From Ophelia neglecta (lineage: Eukaryota), in contig OZ260662.1 in assembly GCA_965285935.1 (NCBI GenBank), forward strand, positions 68,882,001-68,946,000: a DNA stretch of 64,000 nucleotides, in the 5' to 3' direction. The position numbers were made by a program, and so were the translations under genes. Below are positions 21,729-59,124 of the stretch, one piece after another (the first letter of the stretch is position 1; each line of letters starts with the position of its first letter). Below the pieces are notes generated by a model. The model did not search any database. It saw only the letters and a program-made list of their open reading frames with translations, and had not been told where the DNA came from.

Positions 21729-24700
21729 TCACTTCTGGTAGTCTTTCCACTTGTTGAGATCCACGGAAGGGATGTATGCACAGGGTCTGATGTAGTTGAC
21801 ATCGCCCTGATACAATGCCAGCAAACTGTAAAGATCCTTAGAAGCCGCTTTGCTGAGGACGTTGAAAATATAACAGAACGAAATATATAACATATATATG
21901 TGTGTATTTGAATTAAGAAACAGATAAATACGATGATGGACTACTACCATGAGACCCCAAGCCATTAGTGTCTCCTTTTTTACCCTTAGTGTAAACCTGG
22001 TAAATGTAGACACGTGTTTACTCACGAAATGCCTTTCAAAGCCTCTGGGAAAGGTCGTAGGAATGACCATCGCTGTATCTTTTTAATGTGGTCCAAATTA
22101 TCACAAAGGACTCTGGACAATGATGATTTCCGGATCTCATTTAGTTGATCTATAACATAATAATGTCATGCTTTTGACCTTTATTCTTGGTAGATCAAAA
22201 TGTATAATAAACTTATACTATTTTATTGTAATTGTCCATTGTAGGCAATAATGTTTGATTTGTTCGGAAAAAGGGATCAGATAATCAAAACGAATGTGTG
22301 CACTTGTACATTTCAGTTACTCGCTTAGTACAATGCATATGAACGAAAATTATAAAGACCATTATTTAATCGGAACCAACATTTTGAATATTGGTAAACT
22401 GACCTGGCCTGAGTCCGACCACACCATCTTCTCGCTCGTGCCAGAACCTGTCTGATACCCTTACATCATGAAACTGTCGTGCATTAATACAGCCAAACGT
22501 TGGTCCCACGAGAGCTCCCGCTAAGAGTCGCTCCGAGATACCGCCCGCAAACAGGTCTATATCGGCGACATCCCTAGGGGGAATAGACAAGGGTAAAGAG
22601 CGTAGAATGGTATGTATAGTATGACATGCTGGTAACCGTTGATCATTTGAATTATAATTCCAATTTGGTGGGCCCAAACTGTGCTTGTCGAAGAGTTGCC
22701 CTTTGAACATGTTAGCATGATCTTTCATCAAAGAAAATATTAACAAAAAAGCGTCTAAGAGGCCAGCATTCAGCCAATTGCAAGCAAGGGCCATATAATC
22801 GTACAACGGCTAACTACACAATAAGAAGTTGCATTTAATAACCGAGATTACACTTACTCGTAAAGCATTTCAAGTTTGGCCTTAGCGTCCTCGGGGATGT
22901 CTGTTAGCTCAGCAAATGACTTGGGTACTGACAGATCACACCACTTCCGCCATGCAACGTAACCTACAAGATATAACACGCTTCCCTTATTAATAAGACT
23001 TACTTCATGTTGGCGCTTCAGGAACATGATGGTTTCTTTTTGTAATCTTTATTTGGTCTTTACATGTCGAGGAAACACATTTTCGTTGCAACCTGTGTTT
23101 TTTATGTTCTTGATCCTAAATCACGCTCACTAGAATCACCCTTTCCCCTCATCTGTTACCTGGCAGACCGTGGTCCCTCCCCCGTTGGGTATTCAGACTG
23201 GGCAGATCTGTGCCTGGGACATCTGGAGGGTTCTCACTGAACAAATGAGCAGACACCTGTTTAGCGAAGTGTCGGTCTGGATCTTGTGCAGGATGTGCCA
23301 CGTGACCTAGCATCAAAGCGTCTATTCCTGACCCACCGGGTAGATTAGTATCGTACGCCGCACGAGGTCGATGGTTAAACTGAAATTACATTAATTGTTT
23401 GGAATTAGATTCAAAATTAGTTTACATGTCAGTTAGTCTGCATAAACGAGGTGCTCCCTTTATAATCGGCCTGACTATCGGCCTGCCTAAAACCGACTTG
23501 CGTATTTTGTTTTTGCAATGGTTCTGCTCTTGGCAAACCTGTCTAGTATATATACTTATCACCCAGAGCACTATTCTGTCATCGAAAGACTTTAAAGAAT
23601 ATGCACACGCGTTTCTATGATACGGCTGCTATAGGCCAAATGTCACTTACCGAATCATGTAAGAGTTTTGCGACCTATTATGTACATATAATTGTCTTTA
23701 TTTGTCACTGTGTTAAAATCATCTGATATAAATTATTATGCGAACCGTTATTCTAGCCAATCTCATTTGGTTTTTATTTTAACATTTAAGGTAGAATCAA
23801 TAACAACCTGGTGAACTTAATAAATAATCAAGCCTTGGTATAATAATTATGGCGATCTATATTATGCTGGAATGCTGTTCTGGAAATTGAATATTTCAAG
23901 CCAAAACTCTAGATGCATATGACCACATGCTTGTAAAGATAGAAGAAAGCCGACCAAACTTTGATTTGTGGGCCTGCTTTTCTCTAATCTATAGGGCACA
24001 CTGGAAATCGTATAGGGCTGTAGTTGGAATCCAACTGAACCATACCATGATTAAGGTAAATACAAAACACATTTTGAAACATTAAGCCATATCGTATCTC
24101 TGTCTGATATCTGTCCTTTGTATCGGATTTTCCAGCATATCTGTCATAATTGATCACATCTTCTTGGACGAGTGGGCAGAGTTATGGACATGTGAATTAA
24201 AGCTGGATGCTTAATATTAAAGTAGAAGTGCGCACTAAACGGTTAACGCAATTGGGTTATTATCACCTCTTGCATTGGCTATTACGACATAAACTGTCAT
24301 AATCATAATAGTTTATCTGCTGGGCTATTTTATTTACTATATAACTCAACAAAGGGTGCTAGAAAAAAACTACACTTAAATTAGTGTGTTCTAACACTGT
24401 TACTTTCAATATAAGTCGTTTTATGAAAAGTTCTTATGACAAGGTTAGGATATTTTTCCCTCTTGTTCTTCAGGTATATTCACCACTGTTTAATTATTCA
24501 TAACGAATTATTTGTATAAACTTCTGCTAGTAATGACCATGAAGATGTTATGATGGCAATCATGGATAAAATGTTTTGAGCCCCTTGTTTCTGCAATTAG
24601 TGTATATATTTTTATAAGAGTTTATAAGAGTTTAGAAACTTTTAACCTCGACTTTGACTGTACTTCCATTAAATTCTTGAAATACACCAACCAAACTGAT

Positions 24701-27700
24701 ATGTAAGTTACCTTTAAACTTCTTCTCACACTTATCTTGCGTTTAAGACAAAACTGGGTAACTACCGTTGCTTTACCAGTAAAAGAAACGTATTCCCTAT
24801 GACGCCATTTTGATTTTGTGTTTAAAGACCAAGCTATATCCGGAAGACATTTTCAGATAAAAACACTTATGGTAATAATCCTAGCCAGCGTCATTCTCAC
24901 CAAGCTGTCCTTCTCAAAGAGATCCTGATTGTACATGGAGTTAGTTAACTTGAGAAAGTTACTAATCTGACTGTGACCAAATCGGAATGCAGCAGTGGCA
25001 AATGCGTTGGATATGTCCGGGCTAACAAGTGGATTGTATCCTGAAACATTAAAAATCTCCCAAATAGTGGTCAACATCATTCAAATGAGTAACAATACTA
25101 GACAAACTAATAACATTATCAAATCGGTTTCAGAAGGATACCATCGCCTCGATCCCCGATATAAAAAGCTTGCCGAAACACTAGCTTCCGGTTCGAATCA
25201 AAAAGGGTAAAAATATACTTGAAAATGTGTACTGTACCTGTATAATACCCATGTATACTTAGTCCTAGGCCATACTTTTTCACAAGATCTGGACCAACAA
25301 CGCTTGGTACGTATTCATTGTATGAGATGTACTGCATAATTGCAGCCATTATCGCTCGCACCTCCTGGTATAAACGCTCGCCAGACCAGTGAGGGTTAAT
25401 CTTGTGGAGTTCGTCCTCCATCCGGTTGTGCTCGCGCATGAACACAGTGTGAAGAGACGCTAGACCAGTATGTTCATTAAGGCGACCGTCACCTAGATAA
25501 AGCAAACGTATTGCCAATACAGACTGAATAAAAAATTCTTGTGAGGTTGCTGAAAATGAAAAATTGCAAAGGAAAACAGGAAAAAATATGTCATGCAAAG
25601 GTAACTTCATAACATTATCAGGCCTATGACTATTTAGACCTAGTCTAAATTAGTTGCCACCGGGCGATTCGTTTAAAAGTTTTTCTTGTTCGGCACATTA
25701 AATATAAATGAAAATGGCACCATGGGTTATATACGTAATTAACTATTGGATATACATGAGTTACCTACAATAAACCGTATAATATCTACTAACTATGGGC
25801 ACCGCAGTGACAGTGACTAGCACAGAGGCAAAACGCAGTAACATATTATGATCATTAATTATTACGAAGGCCAATGTTAGTAACGCGCCTCATACAACGC
25901 TTAAGGCAAATGGCAGTCTATCATCAAAAAGAAAATTTAAACCAAATAAGCTACTAACAATCGCACATGAGGAGCGGTGGTCGTTTGGTTGGCGAGGTTG
26001 GTTTTTAGATGGATGGTGAAGGGGTCGTACATCCCGTTCCTTTGTCAAGGACCATCACCTAGCTATAACATTCTCCGCCCGGGAGACTCGAAGGTGCCTG
26101 CCAGACGAATCAGTATGGTTCTAAGGCGCCAAGACCATTGTTGCTAGTATGCTCCCCGGGATGGTTCAGGAGAAATTGAATGAGTATACCCCCATAGGTC
26201 TGGAGGTAACTTGTACCTTTTTGTGTATTGGCATAACCTGGCGGTACTCATTAAATCGTACCTTTCATATGTGTCTTAGAGCTTCATAATAATATCTTTT
26301 ATATTTGCTTCCTGTCATCAATCAACGTTTGCCTTTTGCTTAATGTCGGACAGAAGTAGGAGTACATTTTGTTTGTGCGTGAAAGACATATTTGCTCATA
26401 CAACACCATGAACTACGTTGCAAGATTATTTTAACGGCATGTGTTACCTGCTTTAAAGCATCTTATTGTCTCGTTGAGGTCTCTGCAAGCTGGCACATTG
26501 TTTGTTGGTAGAAGGTATTTCAGTGTGTTGTCGTAGGGGTGTTGTTGGGTCCGGAGTCTCCCCCTGCTGGAGTCGGAGAAGTCTCTAAGGTCATCAGCCA
26601 TCTCTTTGGTACTTCCATAGACATTGGAGGCGTCGATCCACGAAGTTATCTGGTTAATCTGTTCACGGGGGCCTTGAAAACAAACATTTAACCTAAGCTG
26701 TACAACTTTCATTCTTTTTCGTCCATATTATGCTTATCTAATACGGACCTCACGGTAAAAAAGTATAGGGATTATACCTAAAGCTTATGCTCTCGGAATG
26801 ACCTGAGGATATGAGCAGAGCACCGTTGCTCGTAAGATATGAAGGTGGAGCTTGCCAAATAGCCACTGCCGTCCCGCATGAACAACTTCTTTAACCATAC
26901 TCAAAGATCTACCCACCCTGTCTCTCATCAGACGAACCCATCTTTCGCCTGCAATAAATGTTAGGTATTTACTTACTTAATCGACAGTTGTCCAGCAAGC
27001 CTTCCTCAGTACGGACAAACATGAGACACTTTTGATCACCGAAGTCCGGATCTCCGTCGGGTATCGGGATCGGGAAGCAGGCTCGGTTCTCCTCTCCCTC
27101 GGTACTACACCCATCATCCCCGCAGGTCACGTCCATGGTCGGCCCCGAGCCGTCTTCCGTGGTCGTCAGTTTGGCAATAGCAGTACGGTCAAGGTCATGG
27201 TCCAGGAACTGTCCAAAGCGCATGTGCATTGTGGTGACTAAGTGGCTGGGATTATCAGCGTCTGTGAATAGCTCTAGGGAAATTTTTCGGACGCTAGGAA
27301 GAGGGTTACCACTCACACTCGCTCTGGGTTCACCGATACCTGAATATTATATCTTAATACAATTTTAAGAAACTAAATTAGAAACAATTTCCTGCGGTTA
27401 TCTAGATATACAAACATTACACGCGAGTAAAAAACACGATTATAGGCGGATTAAAGCTTAACAACGACGCCCAACGTATAGGGTAGCGTGACACGTTTAC
27501 CCAAGTAAACCTTCCGTACTATGTTATGTTAACTGATTATAAAAGCCTATCAAGTTAAACGTAATATACAGTTCCTAATTGAAATAAGGGCCTAAGTAAA
27601 CCATTGATATATCGGAGACTAAATCAGATACCCCAGATTTGTACTTTTATTACGGGATGCATATATCGCCCTATCTTTCAGTCCCTAAGTGGAAGTTGAA

Positions 27701-30700: not shown

Positions 30701-33700
30701 CGTGGGAATGAAAATAGGTCGGGTCAAGCTATAAAGGAATCCAGCGCATTGATACGAAGTCAGTGAGCCGTAGACTGGTAAAAAGTAGTACAAACTGTCT
30801 ATTTTGTCAGAGGGTTTTGGTGATGTCGAAAACATTCTAATAAACAAACAAATCGAATCGACTCATGCAGCAAGTATCCGACAATATATTACTCATCAAA
30901 TCGGCCTCCTTTCCCAAGAAATACACAGCTGACTGTGGCGTACGAATATTCAAAGCTGCGAGTCGTTCGTATCGAGACTGCATGGTCGGGTGTCCACCTT
31001 CCCTTCGTAGCAGTGCACACAGCTCTGCTCTCTTCGCCTGTAGCGGTGATGCGGAGAAGCTAGATACGATAAGCATTGGCACCTGCTGCGAAGGGTAGTG
31101 TCCAACCCAACCGGATAAAATGGCGGCGATCGGCAGACGACAGAGGCGAGCGAAAAGGCAAACGCGCACGGTTCGAAGGTTTACATCGCACCGAACTGGT
31201 CCGAAATAAAAAATTCCACGATTGGAGCGGACAGAAAGGCGTCGCCAAAAGTTGGGGGCGTACCGTCCGCCAGCGGCCGAGAAAAATCGTAAACAATTGG
31301 GTAATATATAATAGATTGTCCTCAATTAAAGGGCTTCCAAGTGCAGGCAAACTAAGTGGTTTAAAGGCTTTTTAATATAGTGTATTAATAGGAAATAAAC
31401 AAAAAAGCTACTTAATTTCTGTAGTATATTTCGAGCGACACTTACCGTCGGCATAATCTGGGGGCAGGTGTCTAGCCAAAGGACGGTTTGATTTACCCCA
31501 CAGAGGGCGCCACAGGTTGTTACAAGAACCGTCTATAGTGCGGTACTTGGTATATGGGTTGCAGTGGTTATTCTGGTTGTTTGTTGGGTAAGGGCAGGTC
31601 CCAGGGGTCGCCACTAAGTTCGGCATATCCGGGCCTGCAGGAGTGGGGTTTGGCCTCAGAAATGCAGGCAAAAGTAGGATCAACTTGCCAATGTCATTAG
31701 CTGCTACACCAAATCTACCCAGGAAAATAGAATTAACTGAAGTCATTGCTACAATAAAAAAAAGAACATGCAAGCCCAAGTTCTGATTATCTTTATTTTA
31801 ATTTGTTTTCTTAATCGTAACCAAATCGACGTTGATGCCTAGATGCTCTGTGTGCCTGCCACTAATAGATGGTAAACATCGACTGTTTTTTTTTTGGACT
31901 TTCTGGATTGTTTGGCCATCATTTTTCCGCCGGGTTTTATCTTGCGTTTTCCTACTATACGCGTCGCGCATCGCTTTGTAACACATGTATTGTATGGGAA
32001 AGACCATTTATGTGAAATTGAATGCCCCTTGACCGCATATAGCTTTATTTCTCAGCATTGAACATTCTGGTTACGACAATCTGCTTCATATCATTAATTG
32101 CGAATGTGACCCCTCTTATTAATAGTTTCATTAACTATCACGGGTCGCCTAAATATTCTATTGCAATTGCATTGAATGGATTTTTGCTAGCGGAGTTTAA
32201 TTGTAAATTTATGCAAATGACATCGTTTAACGAAACATTTTCCGCGATCGAAATTATTAAGTAATTGATACATTATGTAATGTTTTACATAACAATCTTA
32301 TATTGTTACCTTACGTGGCACCTGAATACTTGAACACGGTTTTTAATGCCAGACAGTTTGCAATAGGACGACATTAGTGACATTATGTGTCTGTCTACAC
32401 GAGGCTGTAGGGCAAAATATGTCACCTCCACGGACATACATGACCTAATTCTACATACAGTCGGTACATTACACTGGGGTGCAAAGCCCCTTCGGCAACG
32501 AATTAGGGATACTTAATATTGACAACCTTACTTACCTGCAGGCGAATATTAAATAAATTTAAACAAAATTAATGTCAGGTACAAGTATATTACGGTACCC
32601 TGCTATCAGAGGGAACTGGCTACAAATTATGTCTGCATTACAATAGTCAAATGATGTCCAGCCAATTTCTAATGGCACATTTTTAAAGATGTTACCTGGT
32701 TTTGGCAATTCGCAGTACCCCTAGTTGATCGGCTGCGGGTATAGAATTTCTCTTCAGCAACTTACTAGAGCCGAGGAAACTTTGTACTTTACGAAAGGCG
32801 GAAATGCGTTCAACTCTTCGTCTTCTAGTGCCTAAAAACAAGTTTCCTGACAACTTATTTTGTTAGTATAATAGCAGGCTGAGTAATAATTAACACTGTT
32901 TTTAGTAAAAGAACGAATGTGAATGTTATCAAGGATGTATGTGTACATACAGTTTAAAATGACATGAATGGTATAGTATTATCTGTGTAGGGTTTCCTAT
33001 ATAACCGAATGAAAACAAAACTTTGAGAGTTTATTTTTGATCAAACTAAAACTTGTTATGATATGATGATAGGTAATCTTAGTAAACAGTGTGGCTTTAG
33101 TCTATTTACTTCCCATATATTCAGAGGTTATAGATATATGGCTGCTACACAGCGGATTGTTGTTTTTCTTTTTACCTATGGTCATATCTCTTGTCGCGGC
33201 CACCTCAGCACGTAATGCCGACGCTGTTATCTGCCTCGACTCATCCATAATATTCTCTAAATCGGCCAGAACAGCATTTGCAATATCACCAATAGATAAT
33301 GCAACTGTAAAGAAATAAAACGTTTAGAGAGGATTTTGGGGGTAGAATTAGGGATAAACAAAATGTTTCTAAGTCCATGTCTATGTTAAAATGATGCAGG
33401 GGTGAAAAGACCTGAACGTTAGATAATAAAAGAAAATGCTGAGAAGGCATAAACTCACATAAAGAGGCATCTGAAGTTACGAGGGGAAACGGATCGTTTC
33501 ATGAATAAGGTACATGTACTGCGAAGAACTCCCCTCATCACCACAGTCACCCATCCCCACCCATAGATAACCCCTACATACCCCCTCAACCCCCCCCCCC
33601 CAAAAAAAAATAAAATAAAATAAAAAACAAAATAAGGAGCCTAAGATAGTAAGGGGTAGCGTGCTAATTTGAAAGAGTATAGGCAGATCTTTTAAAGAAT

Positions 33701-36506
33701 ATAAAAATACCCAGACGACAAAATACATTTTGGAATATAACAAAAAAATGTAGATATTTTCAGAAACGTTTTCCTCGAACAGTAAAAATCCTGTTACTAT
33801 TCAAGGAAAACTAAAATGAATTTCAAAGTAGGTTAGATCTCGTAACTAATTGAAGTGTGTGTCTTACCGGTCACTTGTCTTTGTGTGGTTGAGACAGACG
33901 GGCACCTGTATAGCGCATCGCACACTTTTAGGGTGGGATTAAAGTTGGGACTGTTCTTTGGACAGTCCGTGCTGAAGCTGCTCTTTCCGTTGCAGGATAT
34001 GAATTTACCACAGTTTCCCGGATAGGAGTAATAGCCGATAGCTCTGTTGTTACAGAATTGAACAGGTTGCACATCTGTCGAAAGAAAGCATGTGAATGTT
34101 TTATTTATCAGAAACTACGACAAGTGTGCTACCAAAATGTTTAAAATAAAGAATAAATACAAATGGGCGTGTATACCAACATGGCAGTGCAAAATCAATG
34201 ATCACGTCTATCAAATCGGTTCGTAAAAACAGTAACCGTCCGCTGTAGACCATCAAACATCAAACCTCCGTTCCTAAGCAATCTTGCTATTAGATGGATG
34301 CCACAATTAAACTTGATATCCCTTGCAATGAGGAGTAGTCAACAGTTTTCTTATTGCGAGTGAGAGCATACACAAACGAGTAAGCAGAACAACGATAAAT
34401 TTTGGCCTCGTGTCTGATGAATCGAACTCTCATAAATTTGCGACCAAAGACGGAATTCGTATGAACCGAAACTAAAGAAGGTGTAAAAGATCTTTGCAGT
34501 CTAAAGGGAAAAAGTGTACTTTATATCTCCTATAGTGCAATAAATACGTAAAGGGAACCAGTCACGCCTTTATTGTAGCTGACCATTACAATTGTAACAT
34601 GCGATGTTATATCAGTCGTATCAGAGGTGACACGTGTGAAAAGTCATAGGCTTATGAATTATTTGAACACTGTGTTGTCAGGCTTAGGATATATGCTATC
34701 GTTTTCCTAAAAAAAAATAGAGAAAACCTGTGTGTCACTATATTGTCAAAACGCCAATTCTCAACATCACGTGACCTTTCGCCCTTGTTTTATTATTTAT
34801 TGATTTTCCTCCTAATTCTTGTGAGCAAAATTTAGCGGAATAGATTACTGCTTAACTGCGTAGATGTTGAAACAATGGCTATTACACAGCCTACAGATAA
34901 TACAGTGATCGATTGTGTATTAAATCACACAAAGCCTAATCGAATCCTTTATCGATGTCCACAATTCCTCATAGGTATTTGTTTTACTTAGGTAAATAGG
35001 TTGAATAATCATTTATCTGTGAATTTTGAAAATGCCCGTTTGACCCCGCATTGTTCATAATATAAGCATGACCCTGGTTCAGTTATATCACCAAAAGGGC
35101 TATGTTAAAACAACGTATTTGTTAAAATCACGATCTTTCAAAGGCAATAATTCTTGAAGTATATAAAGAAAATATTGTCCCCGTACCTCTTGCTTATGAC
35201 GCATCATTTCAGTAGATTGTTAGGTATGCATTTGCCATCCAGATATTACACTAAGTTACATAAATTAAATCCACTAGTCCTATATCTCATTAACAGAGCT
35301 ATGAAAACACACACGCCTAACCCGTTATTCAATCTGACTGTTGCAATTACCTCTTCTTTGCTTAATATGATATGTCATACATATAGCTCATCTTTTGACT
35401 GTACAAATCAAGCATTATGGCTCTATTCTACAGTCAAAATCTGTCAACACTAACTTTTAAACATTATTAACCATAACGGAACCCATTCGCTTCATGTAAC
35501 CTAAAATATTTAGTGGATACATGATATAGCCTAAATCATAAGAAAAACACTTCAGACATTTGCTGGTAGATTTCATTTTTGGATGTGAAAAAATCCACCC
35601 ACCCGTCTACACAAATGGCAATTATTTAATTAAATTAAGAACAATTGTGGGTGTCTTTGCATCTTCGTAGCATTTTAATTATGTTAGGTTAATTATGTCA
35701 TCCGAGGATTAACACGACAGAAAGAAACTACACCTAGCATTTCCAGCATAGATATGAGGTGACAGGAGTGAAAAGTCATAGGTTTATGACTTATTTAAAC
35801 ACTGTCTTGTGAGGCTTAGGATATATATTATTGTTCTCCTAAGAATATAGAGAACACCTGTATTAAAAAAAAATCCATCTGCTAAGTTTGAAAATTTTTG
35901 AGCCATGTTTTTCTGCACAGACAAAGCCACAATGCAATTTCGTTCACTAAAGGTAATATGTATTGTGCTTCAACATTTGTACACAAATAGTCCCCCAACA
36001 TGTTCATCGTTTCATATGGCAAAATTAACAATTAACCAAATCTAAAAAATATCATGTCATCAACTTCATTTTCCACTCACATAATTTTTTCAACATTATT
36101 AAAACATAACGACATTCAATCAGAAAAACAGCAGTATTCACTCAGTTGACCACCAATGCAAGTATTAATTTAACCATTAAATTGACTTGTATTATCTAAC
36201 CTTGAGCTGTTCCTCCGTGAATAAGAGCAATGAGAAGGAATGAAAACACACTGAAATGGGAAAGGCAAAGACAGGGTTCAACTCCGTTGGTTGTTGGCTT
36301 TATATCTTGTCCGACGGTTGTCATACTTGTATCATGTAACATTTAATAAATACCATATGTTACCAGTATCATTTCAGTACGAAATGATTTATATTATCTA
36401 TATATATTGAGAAGTACTAATAATCAAACAACCTTAAATTTATTTTCTTTAAAAGAATTATTCCTTTCAAGAAAACCACTTACAATTGATGAAGAAGCGT
36501 CTCCAT
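21729..36506 (-). CDS. chitin-binding (CBM14) animal heme peroxidase PxB (~846 aa, secreted)
   Basis: Exons 36506-36484, 36250-36201, 34074-33868 (CBM14), [33470-33459 possible microexon], 33304-33176, 32831-32696, 31714-31446, 27339-26977, 26672-26448, 25492-25238, 25040-24901, 23379-23160, 22963-22858, 22573-22404, 22149-22026, 21852-21729 (2541 nt without the microexon). Signal peptide [23 protein letters not shown]. Motifs: [34 protein letters not shown]. Confidence 0.92.
25965..26260 (+). mobile_element. degenerate SINE-like remnant in a PxB intron
   Basis: GC-richer segment with an A-box-like start (GCGGTGGTCGTTTGGTT) and a TATGCTCCCCGGGATGG motif reminiscent of invertebrate SINE cores. 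No intact B box is visible. Confidence 0.3.
28326..31390 (-). mobile_element. internally deleted Helitron in the PxB intron 27340-31445
   Basis: The 3' end has a hairpin CCGTGG-TTGC-CCACGG (28337-28352) followed by GTCACTG-CTAG|T (28326). A PIF1 helicase relic lies just upstream. The 5' end is approximate (CTATATTAAAAAG near 31380). Confidence 0.8.
28615..29240 (-). pseudogene. PIF1-type helicase C-terminal fragment of Helitron RepHel
   Basis: [33 protein letters not shown]...CNGTR...[21 protein letters not shown]...[13 protein letters not shown]...VVYPEIL. There is an in-frame stop at 28807, the frame is broken upstream, and no Rep domain is visible. Confidence 0.92.
33868..34074 (-). other. 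CBM14/peritrophin-A chitin-binding domain exon of PxB
   Basis: [52 protein letters not shown] has six Cys with ChtBD2 spacing and aromatic residues. The exon is phase 1-1, 207 nt. Confidence 0.88.
34624..35860. repeat. dispersed direct repeat of ~105 bp (34624-34730 and 35756-35860)
   Basis: GAGGTGACA..GTGAAAAGTCATAGG.TTATGA.TTATTT.AACACTGT.TTGT.AGGCTTAGGATATAT...ATAGAGAA.ACCTG occurs twice. Confidence 0.85.
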
Positions 36507-38084: not shown

Positions 38085-38261
38085 CAGAGGCGGATTTAGG
38101 GGGGGGGGGCAAATTTTCCAAGGCTGACAACGCCAATGTCGGGATTGTCCCCGGTACCAATCCTCTGAAACCAACTTGCGAAGGTCCAGAATTAGTCCCT
38201 GGTCCGGGCTCACTTTTTGGCAAAGGGGGGGGGGGGCTGCCGCCCCCTAAATCCGCCACTG
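38085..38261. mobile_element. MITE with G-run terminal inverted repeats
   Basis: CAGAGGCGGATTTAGGGGG ... CCCCCTAAATCCGCCACTG, 19 bp with 1 mismatch. Confidence 0.75.
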
Positions 38262-39608: not shown

Positions 39609-42400
39609 TCTTTTGCAGTGGGGCAAAGATTATGTTTTTTGTCATGTCTGTGAGTCCGTCTGTCTGTCTGTCTGTCTGTGCATCTGTCTGCGAGATATCT
39701 CAAGAATCACTTGGCCGACTTCGATGAAATTTGGTGAGAACCTAGAATAGGGCAATGGCTCGAGGCCATTAACTTTTGGTTGACCTAGTTTCAAACTTTA
39801 GGTCACACCGTGACCTTGAACATTTCAAATGGCTATATCTCAGCTGTTTACTGACTGATTTCCGCAAAATTTGGCACGAATGTAGCCAGTCAGAAAGTCT
39901 TCTGACCAAAATTATCTAATTGACCTACTTTCAAAATCAAGGTCAAACCGTGACATTGAAAATTTTAAATGGCTATATCTCAGCTGTTTACTGACCGATT
40001 TCCGCAAAATTTGGCACGAATGTAGCCAGTCAGGAAGTCTTCTGACCAAAATTATCTAATTGACCTACTTTTAGAATCAAGGTCAAACCGTGACATTGAA
40101 AAATTTCAAATGGCTATATCTCAGTTGTTTAATGACCGATTTCCGCAAAATTTGGCACGAATGTAGCCAGTTAGAAAGTCTTTTGACCAAAATCATCTTA
40201 TTGACCTACTTTCAAAATCAAGGTCAAATCGTGATATTGAAAATTTCAAATGGCTATATCTGAGCCGTTTACTGACCGATTTCCGCAAAATTTGGCACGA
40301 ATGTAGCCAGTTAGAAAGTCTTTTGACCAAAATTATCTAATTGACCTACTTTCAAAATCAAGGTCAAACTGTGACATTGAAAATTTCAAATGGCTATATC
40401 TCAGCCGTTTACTGACCGATTTCCGCAAAATTTGGCACGAATGTAGCCAGTTAGAAAGTCTTCTGACCAAAATTATCTAATTGGCCTACTTTTAAAATCA
40501 AGGTCAAACCGTGACATTAAAAATTTTAAATGGCTATATCTCAGCTGTTTACTGACCGATTTCCGCAAAATTTGGCACGAATGTAGCCAGTCAGAAAGTC
40601 TTTTGACCAAAATTATCTAATTGACCTACTTTCAAAATCAAGGTCAAACCTTGTCATTGAAAATTTCAAATGGGTATATCTGAGCCGTTTACTGACCGAT
40701 TTCCGCAAAATTTGGCACGAATGTAGCCAGTTAGAAAGTCTTCTGACCAAAATTATCTAATTGCCCTACTTTCAAAATCAAGGTCAAACCGTGACATTGA
40801 AAATTTTAAATGGCTATATCTCAGTTGTTTACTGACCGATTTCCACAAAATTTGGCACGGATGTAGCCAATTAGAAAGTCTTCTGACCAAAGTTATCTTA
40901 TTGACCTTCTTTTAAAATCAAGGTCAAACCGTGACATTGAAAATTTCAAATGGCTATATCTCAGCCGTTTACTGACCGATTTCCGCAAAATTTGGCACGA
41001 ATGTAGCCAGTTAGAAAGTCTTCTGACCAAAATTATCTAATTGACCTACTTTCAAAATCAAGGTCAAACCGTGACATTGAAAATTTTAAATGACTATCTC
41101 AGCTGTTTACTGGCCGATTTCCGCAAAATTTGGCACGGATGTAGCCAGTTAGAAAGTCTTCTGACCAAAGTTTTCTTATTGACCTACTTTCAAAATCAAG
41201 GTCAAACAGTGATATTGAAAATTTCAAATGGCTATATCTGAACAGTTTACTGACTGATTTCCGCAAAATTTGGCACGAATGTAACCAGTTACAAAGTCTT
41301 CTGACAAAAATTATCTAATTGACCTACTTTCAAAATCAAGGTCAAACTGTGGCATTGAAAATTTCAAATGGCTATATATCAGCCGTTTACTGGCCGATTT
41401 CCACAAAATTTGGCACGGATGTAGCCAATTAGAAAGTCTTCTGACCAAAGTTATCTTATTGACCTTCTTTTAAAATCAAGGTCAAACCGTGACATTGAAA
41501 ATTTCAAATGGCTATATCTTAGCCGTTTACTGACCGATTTCCGCAAAATTTGGCACGAATGTAGCCAGTTAGAAAGTCTTCTGACGAAAATTATCTAATT
41601 GACCTACTTTCAAAATCAAGGTCAAACCGTGACATTGAAAATTTTAAATGACTATCTCAGCTGTTTACTGGCCGATTTCCACAAAATTTGGCACGGATGT
41701 AGCCAGTTAGAAAGTCTTCTGACCAAAGTTTTCTTATTGACCTACTTTCAAAATCAAGGTCAAACCGTGATATTGAAAATTTCAAATGGCTATATCTGAA
41801 CAGTTTACTGACTGATTTCCGCAAAATTTGGCACGAATGGAACCAGTTACAAAGTCTTCTGACAAAAATTATCTAATTGACCTACTTTCAAAATCAAGGT
41901 CAAACTGTGGCATTGAAAATTTCAAATGGCTATATCTCAGCCGTTTACTGGCCGATTTCTGCAAAATTTGGCACGAATGTAGCCAGTAAGAAAGTCTTCT
42001 GATCAAAATTATCTAATTCACCTACTTTCAAAATCAAGGTTAAACCGTGACATTGAAAATTTTAAATGCCTGTACTTAGCCATTTATTGAACGATTTTTA
42101 TAAAATTTGAATGTAGCCAGTTAGAAGGTCTTGGGGCTAATTTTATCTTGTTGATTACTTTGAAAATCAAGGTCACACCATGACCTTGATAGGTTCAAAT
42201 TGCTTTATCTCAGCTGTTTATTGACCGATTTTTGTAAAATTTTGCATGAATGTAGCCAGTTAGAAGCTCTTGATCAAAAAACTTTAGTCATCTAGATTAT
42301 TTGCTTATTTTTGCTCATCTATATTTTGCAGAACTTTTTATTACGATTGAGAAACTATCAAAGGGCAAAGATATCGTAGCCGATAGGATACACCTTTAAT
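39609..42400 (+). mobile_element. DINE/HINE (Helentron-associated, pearl/DTC84-like) non-autonomous element with an internal satellite array
   Basis: GGGCAAAGAT occurs near both ends (~39621 and ~42363). A (TCTG)n microsatellite lies at ~39648-39690, an internal tandem array follows, and the 3' end has a hairpin TATCG-TAGC-CGATA and a T-rich tail. Confidence 0.7.
39780..42275. repeat. satellite array, ~140-bp unit x ~18
   Basis: Unit TTGACCTACTTTCAAAATCAAGGTCAAACCGTGACATTGAAAATTTCAAATGGCTATATCTCAG... starts at about 39780, 39920, 40060, 40201 ... 41877, 42017, 42151. The edge copies are diverged. Confidence 0.97.
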
Positions 42401-43567: not shown

Positions 43568-46500
43568 ATGATAAAAATCTTACATCTAAGGTAAGTTGTT
43601 TAAAATATATTCGTGGACTTAAAAAGACTATGCTGTGTGTAGTTTGCCACTTAATGTCCCATACCGTGGGATACTCCCTCCCCGTCTGGTTTATGTCTAG
43701 GATAAATCACAGGCCAAAATATAGTGCTATTTAATAGCGTGCCTTAATTTTTTTAATAAAGATGCAATTATAAATTTACAAAAAACCTCAAGCAGAAAAT
43801 AATATCAAATATCACAAAGCATATCATGCTTCACAGACTGAACCAGTCACCAAAAGCGGTCGTAACTCTAATTGAAAAGACGTGTTTTTTTATCGTCTAC
43901 CTTGTTTTACGTCATATGTACATTGTGAAATCACAATTTCTTTGCGAAGTCATGATGACCGCCGAAAATAACTTTACTACTTAAATACACAAATGCTGAT
44001 GCCCACTGCAATGTGCACCATAATATAATAAATGGAAATGAAGGAGTTAAAGCATTTTGCACCTCCAAGTAATTTTTAGAACGTAAATAATAATGACTTG
44101 ATATTGCCGAATGCACGCCAATACTAAACAATCCTCCAAATGCACCCCCTTAAAAGAAGTTATCACTAGCCCTGAAGCTGAATGGGGTCTGCCGCCAGAG
44201 GTCTCCAATCCATACCCTTATAAGTAAAGTTTTAGGGCGTTTAGTTTTCCAGAAGTCTCAAAATAGAAGCCCCGCTGATTCTCATCCACTTTATCAGGTT
44301 AAATTCAAATTGTCGTAATTTGGTATTTAAGACCCCCCCCCCCCCTAGGAGACTTTAACACTTCTGTGCCCCCCCCCCCCCCCATCAGATGGTGCCACAA
44401 TTCTTTGAAATCTCCCTCCCCAAGGGATTTTCGCCCCCCACCCCACCCCCCACCAAAGGCTACACTAACTGACGATCCCCTTATCTTTGGATAAAAATTC
44501 CCCCAAAACGAGCCTTTCTGGCCGCACATACCGAGTTTGGATGCAAATCCTGAACATCATTAAGAATCACAAACACAAATCATGTACTAGATAATATTCA
44601 ATATACCCGTCCTTGTTTTTAAAGTAACACGTGTACTTTCGTATATGTTCGTACAGCGTTTCAAATGATATTAGTACAATCAGTATAATGTTTGCTTCTT
44701 ACAGAGTAGGTAGAACAATTTAAATTAATAGAGTTACTAGTCCTAGAAAATACATATTGAATATATTATATTAGAGTCATTTTATTCAGCATTCAGCATT
44801 CAAACCTCGTTTTACTGGAATGCCCTATCATGACACCTGATTCACATAGGGCCCAGGTAGCGATGCAGGTATCATCCAAGACTATGTACACTATACCTGC
44901 CTTGTACGTTTTATAACCAACATGTCTTCTTACCTCTATGGCTTTTTTTCCAGTTTTATTTCATTTCTCCTCGCCTCGCTTGATCGAGGAGTGTTTCTTC
45001 AAGGTAAGCTTGGGCATTCAGTTATTATAGCTCTATCATTAGGGATCAATTCTTATTTTGCAACATCTGTGTAATAAGCACATGCTTTATGATGAGTATC
45101 TTTTTGTATATATACTTTCCATACCCTCATATATATACCTATATGTATATATATACATATATTGTGTGCATCGTTTTTAGCAAATTAAGTTGGATATCAT
45201 AATTATGTTGTTGTTACAATTTGTTCATAAGCACTTTGTTGTACATGTACATTTGTCCAAGTCCCTTGGGTAAACTTTGTATGCGTTTGCTACACTATAA
45301 TTTACTGTCTTACGCCCAGCTACCAGTTTTAAAACTAAACACGTCTTAGGTACTATTTTTTTTTATGACTTAATCAGGATAATACACATGTCGAATAATG
45401 TACAATGTACATGTCTCCCAAAGATCATAATAAATGAATCCATTTCCTTGTGACTATTGAAACGTACGGTTCGCATGTGTTGCTAAATGTGCTCGTATTT
45501 ATCTCGATGGTCCGGAAATATGTCTACAATTATTAGTAAGAGATGGAAATAAGGGATCGACGATATACAATGGGGGATAGGGGGTGCGTGTGCGGGGGGT
45601 TGGGGGGGGGGGCGGCGGGCTAAGAAGTGCTAAGAATTCGTGTTTAGGAAAAAATGTTTTGCCAGAACAAATAGGCCTACCTTAATTTACAAATCGAGGA
45701 AATACATGGGTCCTTGGCCTATTTACAGGTGTGTTCCTCGATTATCTAGTTATCAGGTGAACACTCGCGGCTATAGAATTCCGTCCAATAATTAAGTGCT
45801 GTAATGTTTCATTACAAAAATGAGCTTTTTAATTAAAAAACATGCATGTGAAATAATATAAAATGTGCAAAGCTTTATTACCATAAGGAACAGTTGAATG
45901 GATCCGGAATGCGTGTTATTTTGGGCGTAGTGTGATTTCTGTAGGGCATGCATTCCTAGCCACGTGTCATTAAAACGTATGAGCATGTGATCATACTTAG
46001 CCGAATTACAAAGTATAAAGTTTAATATCAAACCTTAGAATTTGAATCAATGAAAGTATGCAGAGGAGGAATCTACAACAACAAATGTGATATGTGATCG
46101 CAGGACAGGAAAAGTATGACCCCCGGTGGGGGGGGGGCGTTCCCGGCAGCGCATCCCTACCAAAAACATTGGTCCTACATTCCTGAATACTGTTATTGGA
46201 GTCAGATACTATACCGAAATTGGCACTGTTCCATTTACCCCTAATGACAGTCACTTCTAATGAAAAAATGAAAAACCAAGTGGTTTGATATATGTCTGTC
46301 ATGTTTTATCTGCAATGCAACGAAGCTTTTGGTATAAAAACGATTTTACTCACTAACTGTGACTCTATCAAATAAATTGCATTAAATACGTTACGAGAAT
46401 GTTCCGAAAGCAAGGTACAATAGAGCTATGAAGTAATAGTTATCTACATCAATCAGGTCAGAAAGGAACACTATACAGTTATATTTTATTTCTAATATTT

Positions 46501-49500
46501 GAAATAAATACAATGAACAGGTTTTTCTAAGCACAGTGTGAAATCACAAATTTACAATATGGAATGCTTTAACAAATACACCACGGTCCAGTGACCAATA
46601 TGTAGGACAGACCTATAAAGATAGCGTTCCTCGTGGGGCATGGTTGTCAGCATCAAAGGATAACCATTAAATAGGTTTACAACTATTACCTGGTAAACAA
46701 GGTTTTGCTATCCCTAAAATATATGGACTTTCAATTAGTTACAGATACGATAGGCTAAACATTATTTGAATACAGAAATATACATAGAAGAGAAACCCCA
46801 AATAATATGCATAACACATATTCATGTACACGTACATTGTATATTGTTGTACATTCACGCCTAAGCTTTCGAACAAAATACGTGAAAAGTTTGTGCTCTG
46901 AAACACAGAGGTAAATTTTTATTTATCATTTAAACCAGAACTTCAGACATCAATGATGAATATATATTTCATGTACGCAATGTATTACCTGGTCGCCGAA
47001 AATGAAGTAATATTCAAAAATTGAACATTTCATTTGAACCTTGTGCTACAGAGATAAACCCTGTTCAGTTCTGCAGTGTCAGAGCTAGGGGTTCATATCC
47101 CTACCATGGAGACTGTGGACGATACATATTATGCGAAGACAGGAGGAGCTCTATTTTAAATTGTCCAAACCATGCCCCAAACTTCGATCCCACGTCAAGA
47201 GCGTGTGATGAGTCATTTATATGCCCATCAGACTCATTCAGAGCTACATCGAATGTTGTTAAAGGTAAGTCCACCATATCTATCACAAATGTACTAATTT
47301 GCCCTTGAACCGCGTTTTTTGTTTACTTTTTGAAAGGCTAGCGAAGTCATTTCAAAAATCATTCCCAATAAATTTCTCCATGTATTCTGTCTACCTGCAT
47401 GTAAGAGACCAACTTAGTATCAACTGGATATGAGAGACCAAACCCTTAAGGTTAAAGTGTAAGAATTAAACAATTGTTCAAAGCGGGTATATATAATGTC
47501 TTAACTTTTACAAATATATCCTTGGTTTTGTAACCACGAAAAGTTAGGTTAAGGATTTTTGGCCTTAAAAGTTTATGGTCGGAATGTAAAACTGAATCAA
47601 TAGTCACATTCGACTCAATTGCGTTCAAGGTGTAATACCAATAAAAGTTCTAGCGCCTAGGGCCTAATCTTCGGGAACCTACTATGTCTTAATTCACATG
47701 ATGCGCTCCGTTTTTTCGAAATTTTAATTATATTGTTCTTTAATTTCAGATGAGTTATCTGTAGAAGGCGTGGCCGACGCTGTCGTGGCTGATTTGGACA
47801 ACATCATGAACGAGTCACGGCAGAAAACATCGTCAGCGTTACGAGCAGAGGCAGCTGCTACCAGAGTGGCCGCGACTCGTACGCGAAAAATATTTAATTA
47901 ATAAATCAATGCTTTATTCGGCTGCAAGAACCGGTTTTTCGTTGTCAGATTACACTACGATTTTCGAACGTTCATTTGTACATGCCCACAAATCGTAAAG
48001 GGCATTCAATATCATGAAGACGATAAGCTCTTTGGGGTTACTTTAATGACTTTTTTTGAAACTACCATTTACAGGCAAGACGCGTCCATCCTTCAGAAGA
48101 ATACAAAGTTTTCTCGGCTCCAGTCTGATGCTGAAGAAGATGTCGATACCAGCGGCACACCAACTAGGGGTACTCAAAATTGCCAGACAGAGGTAAAGGT
48201 TACGACAGCTGTCTGGCAATATAGTTTGAATGTTGGGCCTTGTAGCACAATGAAAACTACTTTCAGCCGGGTGTAATACAATCAATGAAGACAGATGACA
48301 GAATAGCATCTTGCTACGACATACATAATCAGTCTTGAGGACCTGTTGAAGCAAGGATCCCGATCTCCTAAAGTCTTTACTTTGACCAGAACAGATATAA
48401 TATGCCTGATTGTGGCACCTTCAGACATCAATGCTAGTGGCATATTCAACAAAATAATTTTGTTTTACAGGTATGATCTACCGGTCGAGGCCATTGCCCC
48501 TTTAATGAATCTTTTGCCGGTATTGCTGAAGCCCAACCCGATTTGTGCTGGCCCGGATATGTCAGAGATTGTCCATGTAACCCCCGGGACTTGTCCCTGT
48601 CTTCTAAACAACCACAAAAGACGTTGCTATCCATATGCCAAGTACCGCACCATAGACGGGTCTTGTAACAACCTGGGCAGGCCACTCTGGGGAAAATCCA
48701 ACCGACCGCTGGCCAGGTACCTGCCCTCGGATTACGCTGACGGTAAGGAACGCTTTTAGGTAATTTTAAGTGTCGTCAGGTGTACGTTGAAGACACTGGG
48801 TGTGCTTTACGGTGACATTTTGGGAGATACGAAGATATTTTGCATTTGAATTAACAATTGCTTATGGTCATAGTTGATTCAGTTTTAATATTCATATTCA
48901 TATGAAAATAGAGGTTTCGAAATAATGCCTGTCGTAGTACTTAGTCATCCTTGGTAGGACTAAACGGCGCAGCGGACTGCTTTCCGTCAGTCTACATTCA
49001 CCTATATGCGGCCGCGCGGACAGCGCCGCAGTGTTATTCCTGCAAATGACTACTAGGACAGCCAACCTTTCGACGTTGGTCAAGAACCTCTATTTTTACA
49101 TGGATATAATTTTTTCTTTACTGAATCGACTATGACGAATCGAATGTTTAAATGTGACCATAGCATATCACCACTCTATATCGCCGGAAAAATAGCGCAT
49201 TTTGGTGAAGTCGGAAAATTTCGGCTTCCGTCAGACGGCTGATGGCTTCCGGTATGGCAATAAGGGCCTACTTTGAAAAATGTAAACAACATAATAAAAC
49301 ATAGAGCTGCCCTTTGAAGCCACGTAACTTAGCTAACACTAGTCTGATCGAAGATTCGTCAAATTTAATGTTCATGTTAAATGAATAATTGACCATTACT
49401 GCAGGCATAGGTGATCCCAGAGTGAGTGTCAGCGGAGGTCCTCTCCCCACTGTACGTAAGATTACCCTGGAGCTCTTCGGAGATACCGACAGCCCCAGCC

Positions 49501-58500: not shown

Positions 58501-59124
58501 CGTTAAAATTGTCTTTGAAATGTAAATTAATGTTTTTGATGTCCATTTTATAATCGAGAAAACTACCAATCCGATATAGGCCTACGTTAGCGGACTTTTT
58601 TTTCGCAACCTTTTTTGCTATTCTTTATAATAGCCCCTATCTGCAAATGTTTGTAGCCTAGAATACATATTGTTGGTTATAAGGTGTTTTTGACTTTGAG
58701 TTCTTCATTGTGGTGATTCAATATTTCAGATCAGATTAAAGAGATACGGAAATCATCGCTCTCCAGAATCCTTTGCGATAATTTAGATCACATAAAACTT
58801 ATACAGCGATGGTCTCTTCTTCGGCCGCTCTCGTCCGCATTTGAAGGCATGTCGTAAGTATTCAGTTATCTTTTTAGTGCTAAGCAGACGACTCAGAGAC
58901 GGTGAGTAGTACGATCATCTTTGTCACGACTAATGTGTTGATATTGTGGGCGTAGGTTTTTTTAATTTAGTTACCGTTTGATTAGTTGTTTTAACTTCTT
59001 CAGGCCAGGATCTTTCCAGGAGCTGTTCAGTTTAGTGACATTATATCGGGGGGACAACAACGCAATAAGACCATGTGGATACATCCCCACAGTAAATTTG
59101 TGGAGATGGAGAACAGCCGATTAA
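43568..59124 (+). CDS. chitin-binding (CBM14) animal heme peroxidase PxC (~842 aa)
   Basis: 15 exons: 43568-43590, 44954-45003, 47052-47264 (CBM14), 47750-47878, 48075-48192, 48471-48742, 49405-49767, 51317-51541, 52199-52453 (GC donor), 53571-53710, 54817-55036, 57521-57626, 58130-58299, 58730-58853, 59004-59124 (2529 nt, in frame). Most exon lengths equal those of PxB. Motifs: [34 protein letters not shown]. Confidence 0.92.
47052..47264 (+). other. CBM14/peritrophin-A chitin-binding domain exon of PxC
   Basis: FCSVRARGSYPYHGDCGRYILCEDRRSSILNCPNHAPNFDPTSRACDESFIC has six Cys. The exon is phase 1-1, 213 nt. Confidence 0.88.
48905..49096. mobile_element. palindromic MITE-like insert in PxC intron 6
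   Basis: 12-bp perfect inverted ends AAAATAGAGGTT/AACCTCTATTTT, plus an inner inverted pair CTGTCGTAGTACTTAGTCAT / ATGACTACTAGGACAG. Confidence 0.55.
52576..53331. mobile_element. TIR element remnant in PxC intron 9
   Basis: GTTGCCTAATAAGCCGCGCCGAGGAT (52591-52616) is inverted at 53291-53315. Flanking CGCCCAGCCATG pairs imperfectly with CATCGCTGGGGCG. Confidence 0.6.
53211..53300. repeat. minisatellite, 20-bp unit x4.5
   Basis: ATCCG(T/C)GGCGCTCTCCATAT is repeated in tandem. Confidence 0.95.
57402..57439. repeat. perfect 14-bp inverted repeat with a 10-nt spacer
   Basis: TCTGGGACTAGTAT-gaatatcaat-ATACTAGTCCCAGA. Confidence 0.85.

What the first reader, a model, noticed from the sequence alone, without database searches (positions are those of the whole stretch)
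21729..59124. Head-to-head pair of secreted heme peroxidases fused to a chitin-binding CBM14 domain
Seen: PxB and PxC both encode a signal peptide, a six-Cys CBM14 exon, a pro-like region and a complete peroxidase domain with intact distal His/Arg, proximal His/Asn and Ca loop. They are transcribed divergently across about 7 kb. Known: CBM14 targets chitin, and animal peroxidases cross-link Tyr/DOPA or oxidise halides. The familiar architectures are peroxidasin (LRR/Ig/VWC), TPO (CCP/EGF), peroxinectin and DUOX. Inference: these are self-anchoring enzymes that tan, cross-link or halogenate a chitin-protein matrix (shell, periostracum, chaetae, radula, jaw or tube), or attack chitinous pathogens. 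This is my best candidate for an undescribed system here.
Basis: partly seen in the sequence, partly recalled or inferred. Interest (0 to 1): 0.78.

Follow-up and report, generated by a model that had tools for sequence, protein, structure and literature searches.

The report
Paired chitin-binding-domain haem peroxidase genes
Two intact, oppositely oriented worm genes each most likely encode a secreted haem peroxidase with a small chitin-binding-type domain at its front; this layout already exists in public brachiopod and transcript sequences and a similar enzyme was proposed for chiton teeth, so it is a new member of an uncharacterised but not unknown family.

Summary
PxB (minus, 36324-21729) and PxC (plus, 44922-59124) are 13-exon paralogues with open frames of 820 and 802 residues. 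Splice positions match throughout and there are no stops or frameshifts. Exon 2 of each is a six-Cys CBM14 domain, shown by Pfam scores above cut-off and by a predicted fold that matches solved CBM14 domains. It is a phase 1-1 exon with strong splice sites, dN/dS 0.28 and no ATG of its own. The peroxidase exons keep the distal Gln/Asp/His, Arg/Glu, proximal His, Asn/Arg and the Ca loop.

Splicing of the CBM14 exon could not be checked: no RNA run holds this locus. The support is comparative. The same order (signal, CBM14, pro-region, peroxidase) occurs in a Lingula RefSeq protein and in two cDNA-like contigs. In this genome 4 of 11 peroxidase loci have a CBM14 exon upstream on the same strand.

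The signal-peptide exon is only a candidate. The "undescribed system" claim is not supported, because a chiton radula peroxidasin-like protein with a chitin-binding domain was already proposed as a chitin-scaffold cross-linker. Chitin binding and anchoring of the mature enzyme remain inferences. Some CBM14-fold proteins do not bind chitin, and the domain lies N-terminal to a pro-region. Verdict: new member of a known kind, moderate interest.

The parts
36201..36324 (-). PxB exon 1, candidate start codon and signal peptide (inferred)
   Evidence: It has an ATG, a hydrophobic core and a phase-1 donor AAG|GTTAGA. It is about 70% similar to the PxC candidate over about 60 nt.
33868..34074 (-). PxB exon 2, CBM14 (peritrophin-A) domain, phase 1-1
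   Evidence: PF01607 scores 33.8 bits. The six-Cys pattern is present. The acceptor is CGACAG| and the donor is G|GTAAGA. dN/dS is 0.28.
32696..32831 (-). PxB exon 3, first pro-region exon (acceptor 32831 or 32846)
   Evidence: It is 77% identical in DNA to PxC 48102-48196. It aligns to the pro-regions of P0004, P0014 and P0155.
31446..31714 (-). PxB exon 4, second pro-region exon and start of PF03098
   Evidence: Pfam profile positions 1-35 are matched; junctions are.
21729..27339 (-). PxB exons 5-13: 27339-26977, 26672-26448, 25492-25238, 25040-24901, 23379-23160, 22963-22858, 22573-22404, 22149-22026, 21852-21729 (stop)
   Evidence: Supported by Pfam, tblastn with full-length relatives and junctions. 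The 820-aa frame is open.
44922..45003 (+). PxC exon 1, candidate start codon and signal peptide (inferred)
   Evidence: It has an ATG, a hydrophobic core and a phase-1 donor AAG|GTAAGC.
47052..47264 (+). PxC exon 2, CBM14 domain, phase 1-1
   Evidence: PF01607 scores 30.8 bits. The model has pLDDT 78, and its top PDB matches are CBM14 of chitotriosidase, Der p 23, Blo t 12, tachycitin and Avr4. The donor AAG|GTAAGT is a full consensus.
48075..48742 (+). PxC exons 3 and 4 (48075-48192, 48471-48742), pro-region and start of PF03098
49405..59124 (+). PxC exons 5-13: 49405-49767, 51317-51541, 52199-52453 (GC donor), 53571-53710, 54817-55036, 57521-57626, 58130-58299, 58730-58853, 59004-59124 (stop)
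   Evidence: The 802-aa frame is open. Catalytic residues are shown.
39780..42265 (.). 140-bp satellite, 17.8 copies, in the middle of the divergent intergenic region

Best explanation
PxB and PxC are two intact paralogues from an old inverted duplication. Each encodes a secreted protein of about 800 residues in the order signal peptide, one CBM14 (peritrophin-A) domain, pro-region, full animal haem peroxidase. They belong to a lophotrochozoan group of peroxidases in which a phase 1-1 CBM14 exon sits between the signal exon and the pro-region exons. This annelid-like genome has at least four such genes. Shown: the gene structure, the domain identities, the catalytic residues (including both haem ester-link residues) and selection on the CBM14 exon. 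Also shown: the same domain order exists on single transcripts elsewhere. Inferred: the CBM14 exon is spliced in here; the domain docks the enzyme, or its precursor, on chitin; and there it uses H2O2 to cross-link matrix proteins through tyrosyl radicals or to make hypohalous acid. In a worm the likely sites are chaetae, jaws, tube, gut lining or egg envelope.
For: There are 13 exons in each gene, with matching junctions, equal lengths for exons 5-12 and no stops. The CBM14 exons pass Pfam and the fold test. They have no in-frame ATG of their own and carry consensus phase-1 acceptor and donor sites at the same positions in both genes. For that exon dS is about 1.5 and dN 0.42, giving dN/dS 0.28. 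Catalytic residues align to MPO, LPO and peroxinectin. Lingula P0155 has CBM14 at 99-149 and peroxidase at 635-1185. P0161 (1025 aa on a 3657-nt contig) and P0289 (850 aa on a 2908-nt contig, CBM14 at 32-83, peroxidase at 260-810) carry both domains in one uninterrupted ORF. In this genome 4 of 11 peroxidase loci have a CBM14 exon upstream on the same strand. In the tree PxB+PxC (100/100) are sister to the CBM14-bearing gene on C7 (93/95). Peroxidases occur in chitinous and mineralised lophotrochozoan matrices: a siboglinid tube (PMC8476170), Lottia and Haliotis shells (PMC4094399, PMC6003135) and the Lingula mantle and shell (PMC4595640).
Against: There is no transcript evidence for these two genes. 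The only public runs that hold the locus are genomic DNA. The signal-peptide exon is only a candidate. Close relatives on cDNA-like contigs or in gene models (P0160, P0004, P0014) lack CBM14, so the module is optional in the family. An AU test weakly rejects the CBM14-bearing genes as one exclusive clade (p = 0.04, group named after seeing the tree). Chitin binding is not guaranteed by the fold (PMC10619976). PxB has an RRRR site right after the CBM14 domain, which could detach it.
Confidence: 0.7

Rival explanations
1. The CBM14 exon is not a constitutive part of the peroxidase mRNA. It may belong to a small separate secreted CBM14 protein (signal exon plus CBM14 exon read into the intron), or it may be an alternative or cassette exon.
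For: In both genes the frame runs on for only 10-14 codons past the donor to a stop, so a short two-exon product is formally possible. A phase 1-1 exon can be skipped without breaking the frame. No RNA data are available. Relatives without CBM14 exist.
Against: Consensus donors are kept at the same phase and position in both paralogues despite dS above 1. The same domain order lies on single ORFs in P0161, P0289 and Lingula P0155. The same arrangement recurs at two more loci of this genome.
Confidence: 0.12
2. The protein is made as predicted, but the CBM14 domain is part of the N-terminal pro-segment and is cut off during maturation. It would then serve sorting, deposition or latency, not permanent anchoring of the active enzyme.
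For: The domain lies N-terminal to a region homologous to the pro-regions of relatives. Mammalian MPO and LPO lose their propeptides (established knowledge). PxB has RRRR directly after the CBM14 domain.
Against: The RRRR site is absent from PxC. Nothing is known about processing of invertebrate members. The chiton protein was recovered from the matrix itself (PMC6351634), although its chitin-binding domain is C-terminal.
Confidence: 0.2
3. The CBM14-fold domain does not bind chitin but another ligand, such as polyphenols, glycoproteins or mucus. The enzyme would then act in defence or digestion, for example as a halide-oxidising antimicrobial peroxidase at a gut or body surface, and not in hardening a structure.
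For: EHEP from Aplysia and Der p 23 have this fold and do not bind chitin, and EHEP was the third-best structural match (PMC10619976). The enzyme keeps both ester-link residues and the distal Gln, as in halide-oxidising LPO and MPO.
Against: Most characterised CBM14 domains bind chitin. The canonical Cys spacing and the aromatic positions are kept. Relatives occur in chitinous or mineralised matrices (PMC8476170, PMC6351634).
Confidence: 0.15

Closest known systems
Lingula anatina 'peroxidasin homolog isoform X2' (P0155) and the cDNA-like contigs P0161 (SRR23076773) and P0289 (SRR14039593)
   Same: They share the N-terminal signal, one CBM14, a homologous pro-region and a full PF03098 domain. 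Identity to PxB/PxC over the pro-region and peroxidase part is 43-47%. They fall in the same lophotrochozoan group in the tree.
   Different: They have a low-complexity linker between CBM14 and the pro-region, of about 90 residues (P0289) to 400 (P0155). PxB and PxC have almost none. They group with another gene of this genome (C1:87.77 Mb), not with PxB/PxC. None of them has been characterised.
Cryptochiton stelleri radular peroxidasin-like protein Cs18149|c2_g1_i5 (PMC6351634)
   Same: It is a secreted haem peroxidase with a chitin-binding domain. It was found by proteomics in a chitin-based hard structure, and its authors proposed that it binds chitin and forms bonds that consolidate the scaffold.
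   Different: Its chitin-binding domain is at the C-terminus, and it is a mollusc protein.
Peroxidasin (Drosophila and vertebrate PXDN)
   Same: It is an extracellular haem peroxidase carrying matrix-targeting domains, and it cross-links a structural matrix through hypohalous acid.
   Different: Peroxidasin has LRR, Ig-C2 and VWC domains and no CBM14. PxB and PxC have none of these.
Shell-matrix and tube-matrix peroxidases (Lottia PLSP1-3, Haliotis idb_25746, Paraescarpia chorion peroxidase-like)
   Same: They are secreted PF03098 enzymes embedded in lophotrochozoan extracellular hard matrices, and cross-linking is their suggested role (PMC4094399, PMC6003135, PMC8476170).
   Different: Those papers report disordered or low-complexity extensions, not a CBM14 domain.

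Membership tests
Animal haem peroxidase (PF03098, peroxidase-cyclooxygenase superfamily) | Match to the whole domain profile | tested here: met
   The exons of both genes cover profile positions 1-530 with scores of 37-117 bits each. They are collinear with full-length relatives.
Animal haem peroxidase (PF03098, peroxidase-cyclooxygenase superfamily) | Distal Gln-x-x-Asp-His-Asp, distal Arg and ester-link Glu | tested here: met
   GQFLDHD aligns to MPO GQLLDHD. D-x-R-x-x-E aligns to MPO DTRSSE. Both motifs are in both models.
Animal haem peroxidase (PF03098, peroxidase-cyclooxygenase superfamily) | Proximal His, its Asn/Arg partners and the Ca-binding loop | tested here: met
   AAFRFGHS aligns to peroxinectin A. 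[13 protein letters not shown] aligns to LPO. [12 protein letters not shown] aligns to LPO TSFLDASLVYGS.
Animal haem peroxidase (PF03098, peroxidase-cyclooxygenase superfamily) | Haem binding and peroxidase or halogenation activity | not testable with these tools
   This needs the expressed protein.
CBM14 / peritrophin-A chitin-binding domain (PF01607) | Profile match above the gathering score and six Cys with canonical spacing | tested here: met
   Scores are 33.8 and 30.8 bits against a cut-off of 22.1. The spacing is C-x13-C-x5-C-x9-C-x13-C-x5-C in both.
CBM14 / peritrophin-A chitin-binding domain (PF01607) | Tachycitin/CBM14 fold | tested here: met
   The model has pLDDT 78 from a 4-sequence alignment. 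The best PDB matches are 5HBF and 6SO0 (CBM14), 8IN6, 4ZCE, 2MFK, 1DQC and Avr4, with rmsd of 1.4-1.7 A for the best-fitting ones (5HBF chain A, 8IN6, 4ZCE, 2MFK), up to 5.8 A for the others, and only modest E-values of 3e-3 and above.
CBM14 / peritrophin-A chitin-binding domain (PF01607) | Binds chitin | not testable with these tools
   Some members of this fold do not bind chitin (PMC10619976).
Peroxidasin | LRR, Ig-C2 and VWC domains flanking the peroxidase | tested here: not met
   All 13 exons are accounted for by signal, CBM14, pro-region and PF03098. No other Pfam family was hit, and models of 802-820 aa leave no room for them.
Lophotrochozoan signal-CBM14-pro-peroxidase genes (Lingula P0155, P0161, P0289) | Same domain order on one mRNA | tested here: inconclusive
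   The gene models give that order with compatible phases. No RNA of this species could be laid on the locus.
Lophotrochozoan signal-CBM14-pro-peroxidase genes (Lingula P0155, P0161, P0289) | Common descent of the CBM14-bearing genes | tested here: inconclusive
   PxB/PxC are sister to the CBM14-bearing C7 gene (93/95). The P0155/P0161/C1 clade is separate, and one exclusive clade has p-AU 0.04. This means either losses or more than one gain.

The most novel reading that the evidence does not exclude
A conserved but never studied lophotrochozoan enzyme family joins signal, CBM14, pro-region and haem peroxidase, and has four genes in this worm. It may be the missing oxidase that hardens beta-chitin structures (chaetae, jaws, tubes; the brachiopod shell scaffold) by docking on chitin and cross-linking or halogenating the associated proteins in place.
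Probability: 0.3. Interest if true: 0.55.

Novelty: new member of a known kind. Interest (0 to 1): 0.35.

Why it matters
If the CBM14 domain really docks an active haem peroxidase on chitin, it would give a concrete, testable enzyme for how worms and brachiopods harden chitin-protein composites such as chaetae, tubes and shell scaffolds. For those structures the cross-linking chemistry is still assigned only loosely to "peroxidases" in matrix proteomes. The four genes in one genome, two of them a divergent pair with ongoing gene conversion, also make a neat case of exon shuffling: a phase 1-1 domain exon inserted between the signal and pro-region exons. The idea and the architecture are not new, so the value is as a well-annotated example and a target for expression and binding tests.

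Tried and rejected
(1) Transcript test. The look-up of sequencing runs found no RNA run, and the three holders are genomic DNA contigs that run through the introns. Splicing could therefore not be tested.

(2) The nearest full-length relatives of the distal-His exon were scanned with Pfam, and none of the 10 has CBM14.

(3) The 10 kb upstream of the Ridgeia gene P0004, and the gene itself, were searched for a CBM14 exon by tblastn and by Cys pattern. Nothing was found except simple-repeat artefacts.

(4) The word search with whole P0161 gave almost nothing, because its words came from the low-complexity linker. It was repeated on residues 400-1025.

(5) Papers on Arenicola 'thyroid peroxidase-like' and on chaetae with peroxidase gave nothing relevant.

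(6) Peroxidasin and peroxinectin membership were considered. Peroxidasin was rejected for lack of LRR, Ig and VWC domains. An RGD is present only in PxC (QGD in PxB), so it was judged incidental.

(7) A pseudogene reading was rejected. Both frames are open and gene-wide dN/dS is 0.21.

The joined spliced proteins were never sent to a search or fold tool. All searches were made exon by exon, by reference. Joined models were built only inside scripts, for frame checks, dN/dS, identities and the tree.
Full report
What is there.

The window is intron-rich animal DNA of about 38% GC. It lies at C2:68.88-68.95 Mb of a 762-Mb assembly. Notes by other agents on this genome call it an annelid (unchecked). 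That fits the nearest relatives of the peroxidase exons, which are Arenicola, Ridgeia/Lamellibrachia, Capitella, Owenia and Lingula.

The window holds three animal haem peroxidase genes:
- PxA, minus strand, about 10.8-15.4 kb.
- PxB, minus strand.
- PxC, plus strand.

The finding concerns PxB and PxC.

Gene models.

blastn of the two halves against each other gave ten collinear exon matches of 72-90% identity. I added tblastn with full-length relatives and a search over all GT/GC-AG pairs that keep the frame. Together these give 13 exons for each gene:
- PxB: 36324-36201, 34074-33868, 32831-32696, 31714-31446, 27339-26977, 26672-26448, 25492-25238, 25040-24901, 23379-23160, 22963-22858, 22573-22404, 22149-22026, 21852-21729.
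- PxC: 44922-45003, 47052-47264, 48075-48192, 48471-48742, 49405-49767, 51317-51541, 52199-52453, 53571-53710, 54817-55036, 57521-57626, 58130-58299, 58730-58853, 59004-59124.

Exons 5-12 have identical lengths in the two genes. The frames are open for 820 and 802 codons. The stop codons end at the finding's limits. PxC intron 7 has a GC donor.

Two boundaries were chosen by paralogy and not by score: the PxB exon 3 acceptor (32831 or 32846) and the PxB exon 4 acceptor (31714).

The CBM14 exon.

Exon 2 of each gene hits PF01607 above its cut-off (33.8 and 30.8 bits against 22.1). A six-Cys pattern scan of all frames of the window finds only these two places.

A model built from four CBM14 exons of this genome has pLDDT 78. 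Its best PDB matches are all CBM14-fold proteins:
- the chitotriosidase CBM14 (5HBF, 6SO0);
- Aplysia EHEP;
- Der p 23;
- Blo t 12;
- tachycitin;
- Avr4.

The best-fitting of these (5HBF chain A, EHEP, Der p 23, Blo t 12) have rmsd of 1.4-1.7 A, the others 3.3-8.1 A; E-values are modest, as expected for 50 residues.

Neither exon has an in-frame ATG between the upstream stop and the domain. Both start at an ACAG acceptor three to four codons before the first Cys. Both end at a G|GTAAG donor. Both ends are in phase 1, which matches the phase-1 acceptor of exon 3.

Between the paralogues this exon is 45% identical in protein. Synonymous sites are saturated (dS about 1.5), dN is 0.42 and dN/dS is 0.28. 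It has therefore evolved as coding sequence since the duplication. Gene-wide, dS is 0.92 and dN/dS is 0.21.

Exon 1 is inferred only. In each gene the best ATG-plus-hydrophobic-core-plus-phase-1-donor candidate lies about 2 kb upstream of exon 2. The two candidates resemble each other in DNA and in peptide. With them the start codons are 8.6 kb apart. A 140-bp satellite of 17.8 copies lies in between.

Pro-region and catalytic domain.

Exon 3 and the first half of exon 4 align to the N-terminal pro-regions of relatives, with the motif F-x-x-x-x-x-F-L-G-S-S ... I-A-R-x-R.

Exon-wise comparison with solved structures shows these residues:
- GQFLDHD against MPO GQLLDHD: distal Gln, ester Asp, distal His, Ca Asp.
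- [12 protein letters not shown] against LPO TSFLDASLVYGS: the Ca loop.
- D-x-R-x-x-E against MPO DTRSSE: distal Arg and ester Glu.
- AAFRFGHS against peroxinectin A: proximal His.
- [13 protein letters not shown] against LPO: Asn and Arg.

All these motifs are in both models. Both haem ester-link residues are present, as in the halide-oxidising mammalian enzymes. No LRR, Ig, VWC, EGF or CCP domain is present.

Is the CBM14 exon really part of the peroxidase mRNA?

Direct evidence could not be had. No RNA run holds the locus. The three holders are DNA contigs of one sample that run through the introns. The support is therefore comparative.

(a) A HMMER search of 1.84 billion representatives with the distal-His exon found no close orthologue; the best full-length hits are about 50% identical. 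The ten nearest full-length proteins have no CBM14.

(b) Word searches seeded with those relatives found three proteins with PF01607 followed by PF03098:
- Lingula anatina 'peroxidasin homolog isoform X2', with CBM14 at 99-149 and peroxidase at 635-1185.
- P0161, 1025 aa in one ORF on a 3657-nt contig of SRR23076773.
- P0289, 850 aa on a 2908-nt contig of SRR14039593, with a signal-like start, CBM14 at 32-83, a homologous pro-region and peroxidase at 260-810.

Uninterrupted ORFs of this size with short flanks are what assembled cDNA looks like. In those organisms the two domains therefore sit on one transcript.

(c) In the window's own genome, PF03098 exons fall into 11 loci and PF01607 gives about 131 matches. 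Four loci have a CBM14 exon upstream on the same strand:
- PxB;
- PxC;
- C7:69.2368-69.2570 Mb;
- C1:87.7735-87.7835 Mb.

The CBM14 exon at the C1 locus is 50% identical to that of P0161, and the one at C7 matches that of Lingula. The other seven loci show none within 10 kb.

(d) In a maximum-likelihood tree of 27 peroxidase domains, PxB+PxC (100/100) are sister to the C7 gene (93/95). They sit inside a clade with PxA, the Arenicola protein and P0160 (95/96). C1 groups with P0161 and Lingula P0155 (100/99). Holding all six CBM14-bearing rows as one exclusive clade costs 24 log-likelihood units, with p-AU 0.04. That group was named after seeing the tree.

P0160 is cDNA-like and has signal, pro-region and peroxidase but no CBM14. 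The module is therefore an optional, shuffled exon within the family. It was either gained once and lost several times, or gained more than once.

What it probably does.

Shown: two intact genes for secreted-type CBM14-plus-peroxidase proteins with all catalytic residues. Everything else is inference.

The most economical reading is that the CBM14 domain places the enzyme on chitin. There it would use H2O2 to cross-link matrix proteins or to produce hypohalous acid.

The literature supports the setting but not the mechanism:
- Peroxidases are abundant in the Lottia and Haliotis shell matrices, where cross-linking is suggested (PMC4094399, PMC6003135).
- A peroxidasin is mantle-specific in Lingula (PMC4595640).
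- A chorion-peroxidase-like protein is in the chitinous tube of a siboglinid worm (PMC8476170).
- In chiton radular teeth, a secreted peroxidasin-like protein with a C-terminal chitin-binding domain was proposed to bind chitin and consolidate the scaffold (PMC6351634).

Three caveats apply:
- EHEP and Der p 23 have this fold but do not bind chitin (PMC10619976).
- The domain lies N-terminal to a pro-region that mammalian relatives remove, and PxB (not PxC) has RRRR right after it.
- The tissue is unknown.

Novelty.

The architecture is already present in public sequence collections, although I found no paper that describes the N-terminal form. The functional idea has been published for a mollusc protein with the domain at the other end. 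PxB and PxC are therefore new members of a known, uncharacterised kind.

What this analysis adds is the exon-level anatomy, the evidence of selection, the count of four such genes in one annelid-like genome, and the link to brachiopod and transcript homologues.

Limits.

The joined spliced proteins were not sent to any search or fold tool; all such calls used single exons by reference. Joined models were used only inside scripts. The organisms behind P0161 and P0289 were not identified. The peroxidase rows from other loci of this genome in the tree are concatenated tblastn segments, not curated gene models.

Noticed in passing
window 10848-15382 (-): This is a third peroxidase gene, PxA, in tandem with PxB. 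No CBM14 exon lies in the 6 kb up to PxB's 3' end. It has a Gly/Asn/Gln-rich and Pro-rich low-complexity stretch just before the peroxidase domain (ORF 14906-15382).
   Followed up: partly
window 39780-42265: A 140-bp satellite of 17.8 copies at 89% match sits in the middle of the divergent intergenic region.
   Followed up: partly
window 49405-49767 and 26977-27339: The distal-His exon is 91% identical in protein, with dS 0.36 against 0.92 gene-wide. DNA contig depth doubles at 49515-49747. This is a gene-conversion tract between the inverted paralogues, as another note (s1-743241) says.
   Followed up: partly
window 28807-29238 (-): A Pif1 2B-domain helicase fragment (PF21530, 58 bits), probably a Helitron remnant, lies inside the 4-kb intron 4 of PxB.
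   Followed up: no
G000 C7:69236776-69257054 (-) and C1:87773545-87783529 (+); loci L003-L007: These are two further genes of the same genome with a CBM14 exon upstream of peroxidase exons. The C7 one lies in a 280-aa open frame, about 12 kb from the first exon of the peroxidase domain (and about 7.6 kb from a pro-region match), which suggests a long linker as in Lingula.
   Followed up: partly
window 52454 (PxC intron 7 donor): PxC has a GC-AG intron (ATG|GCAAGT) where PxB has GT (CAG|GTACAG).
   Followed up: no
window 32820-32831 (PxB exon 3 start): An RRRR furin-like site lies directly after the CBM14 domain in PxB only. PxC has an RGD near its C-terminus where PxB has QGD.
   Followed up: no
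window 7206-7874 (+): This is a 222-aa open frame with no Pfam match. It was not studied further.
   Followed up: no
window 48238-48252: A 15-base deletion allele in PxC intron 3 appears in all three DNA runs, together with many heterozygous SNPs across the locus, including 47221 A>G inside the CBM14 exon.
   Followed up: no
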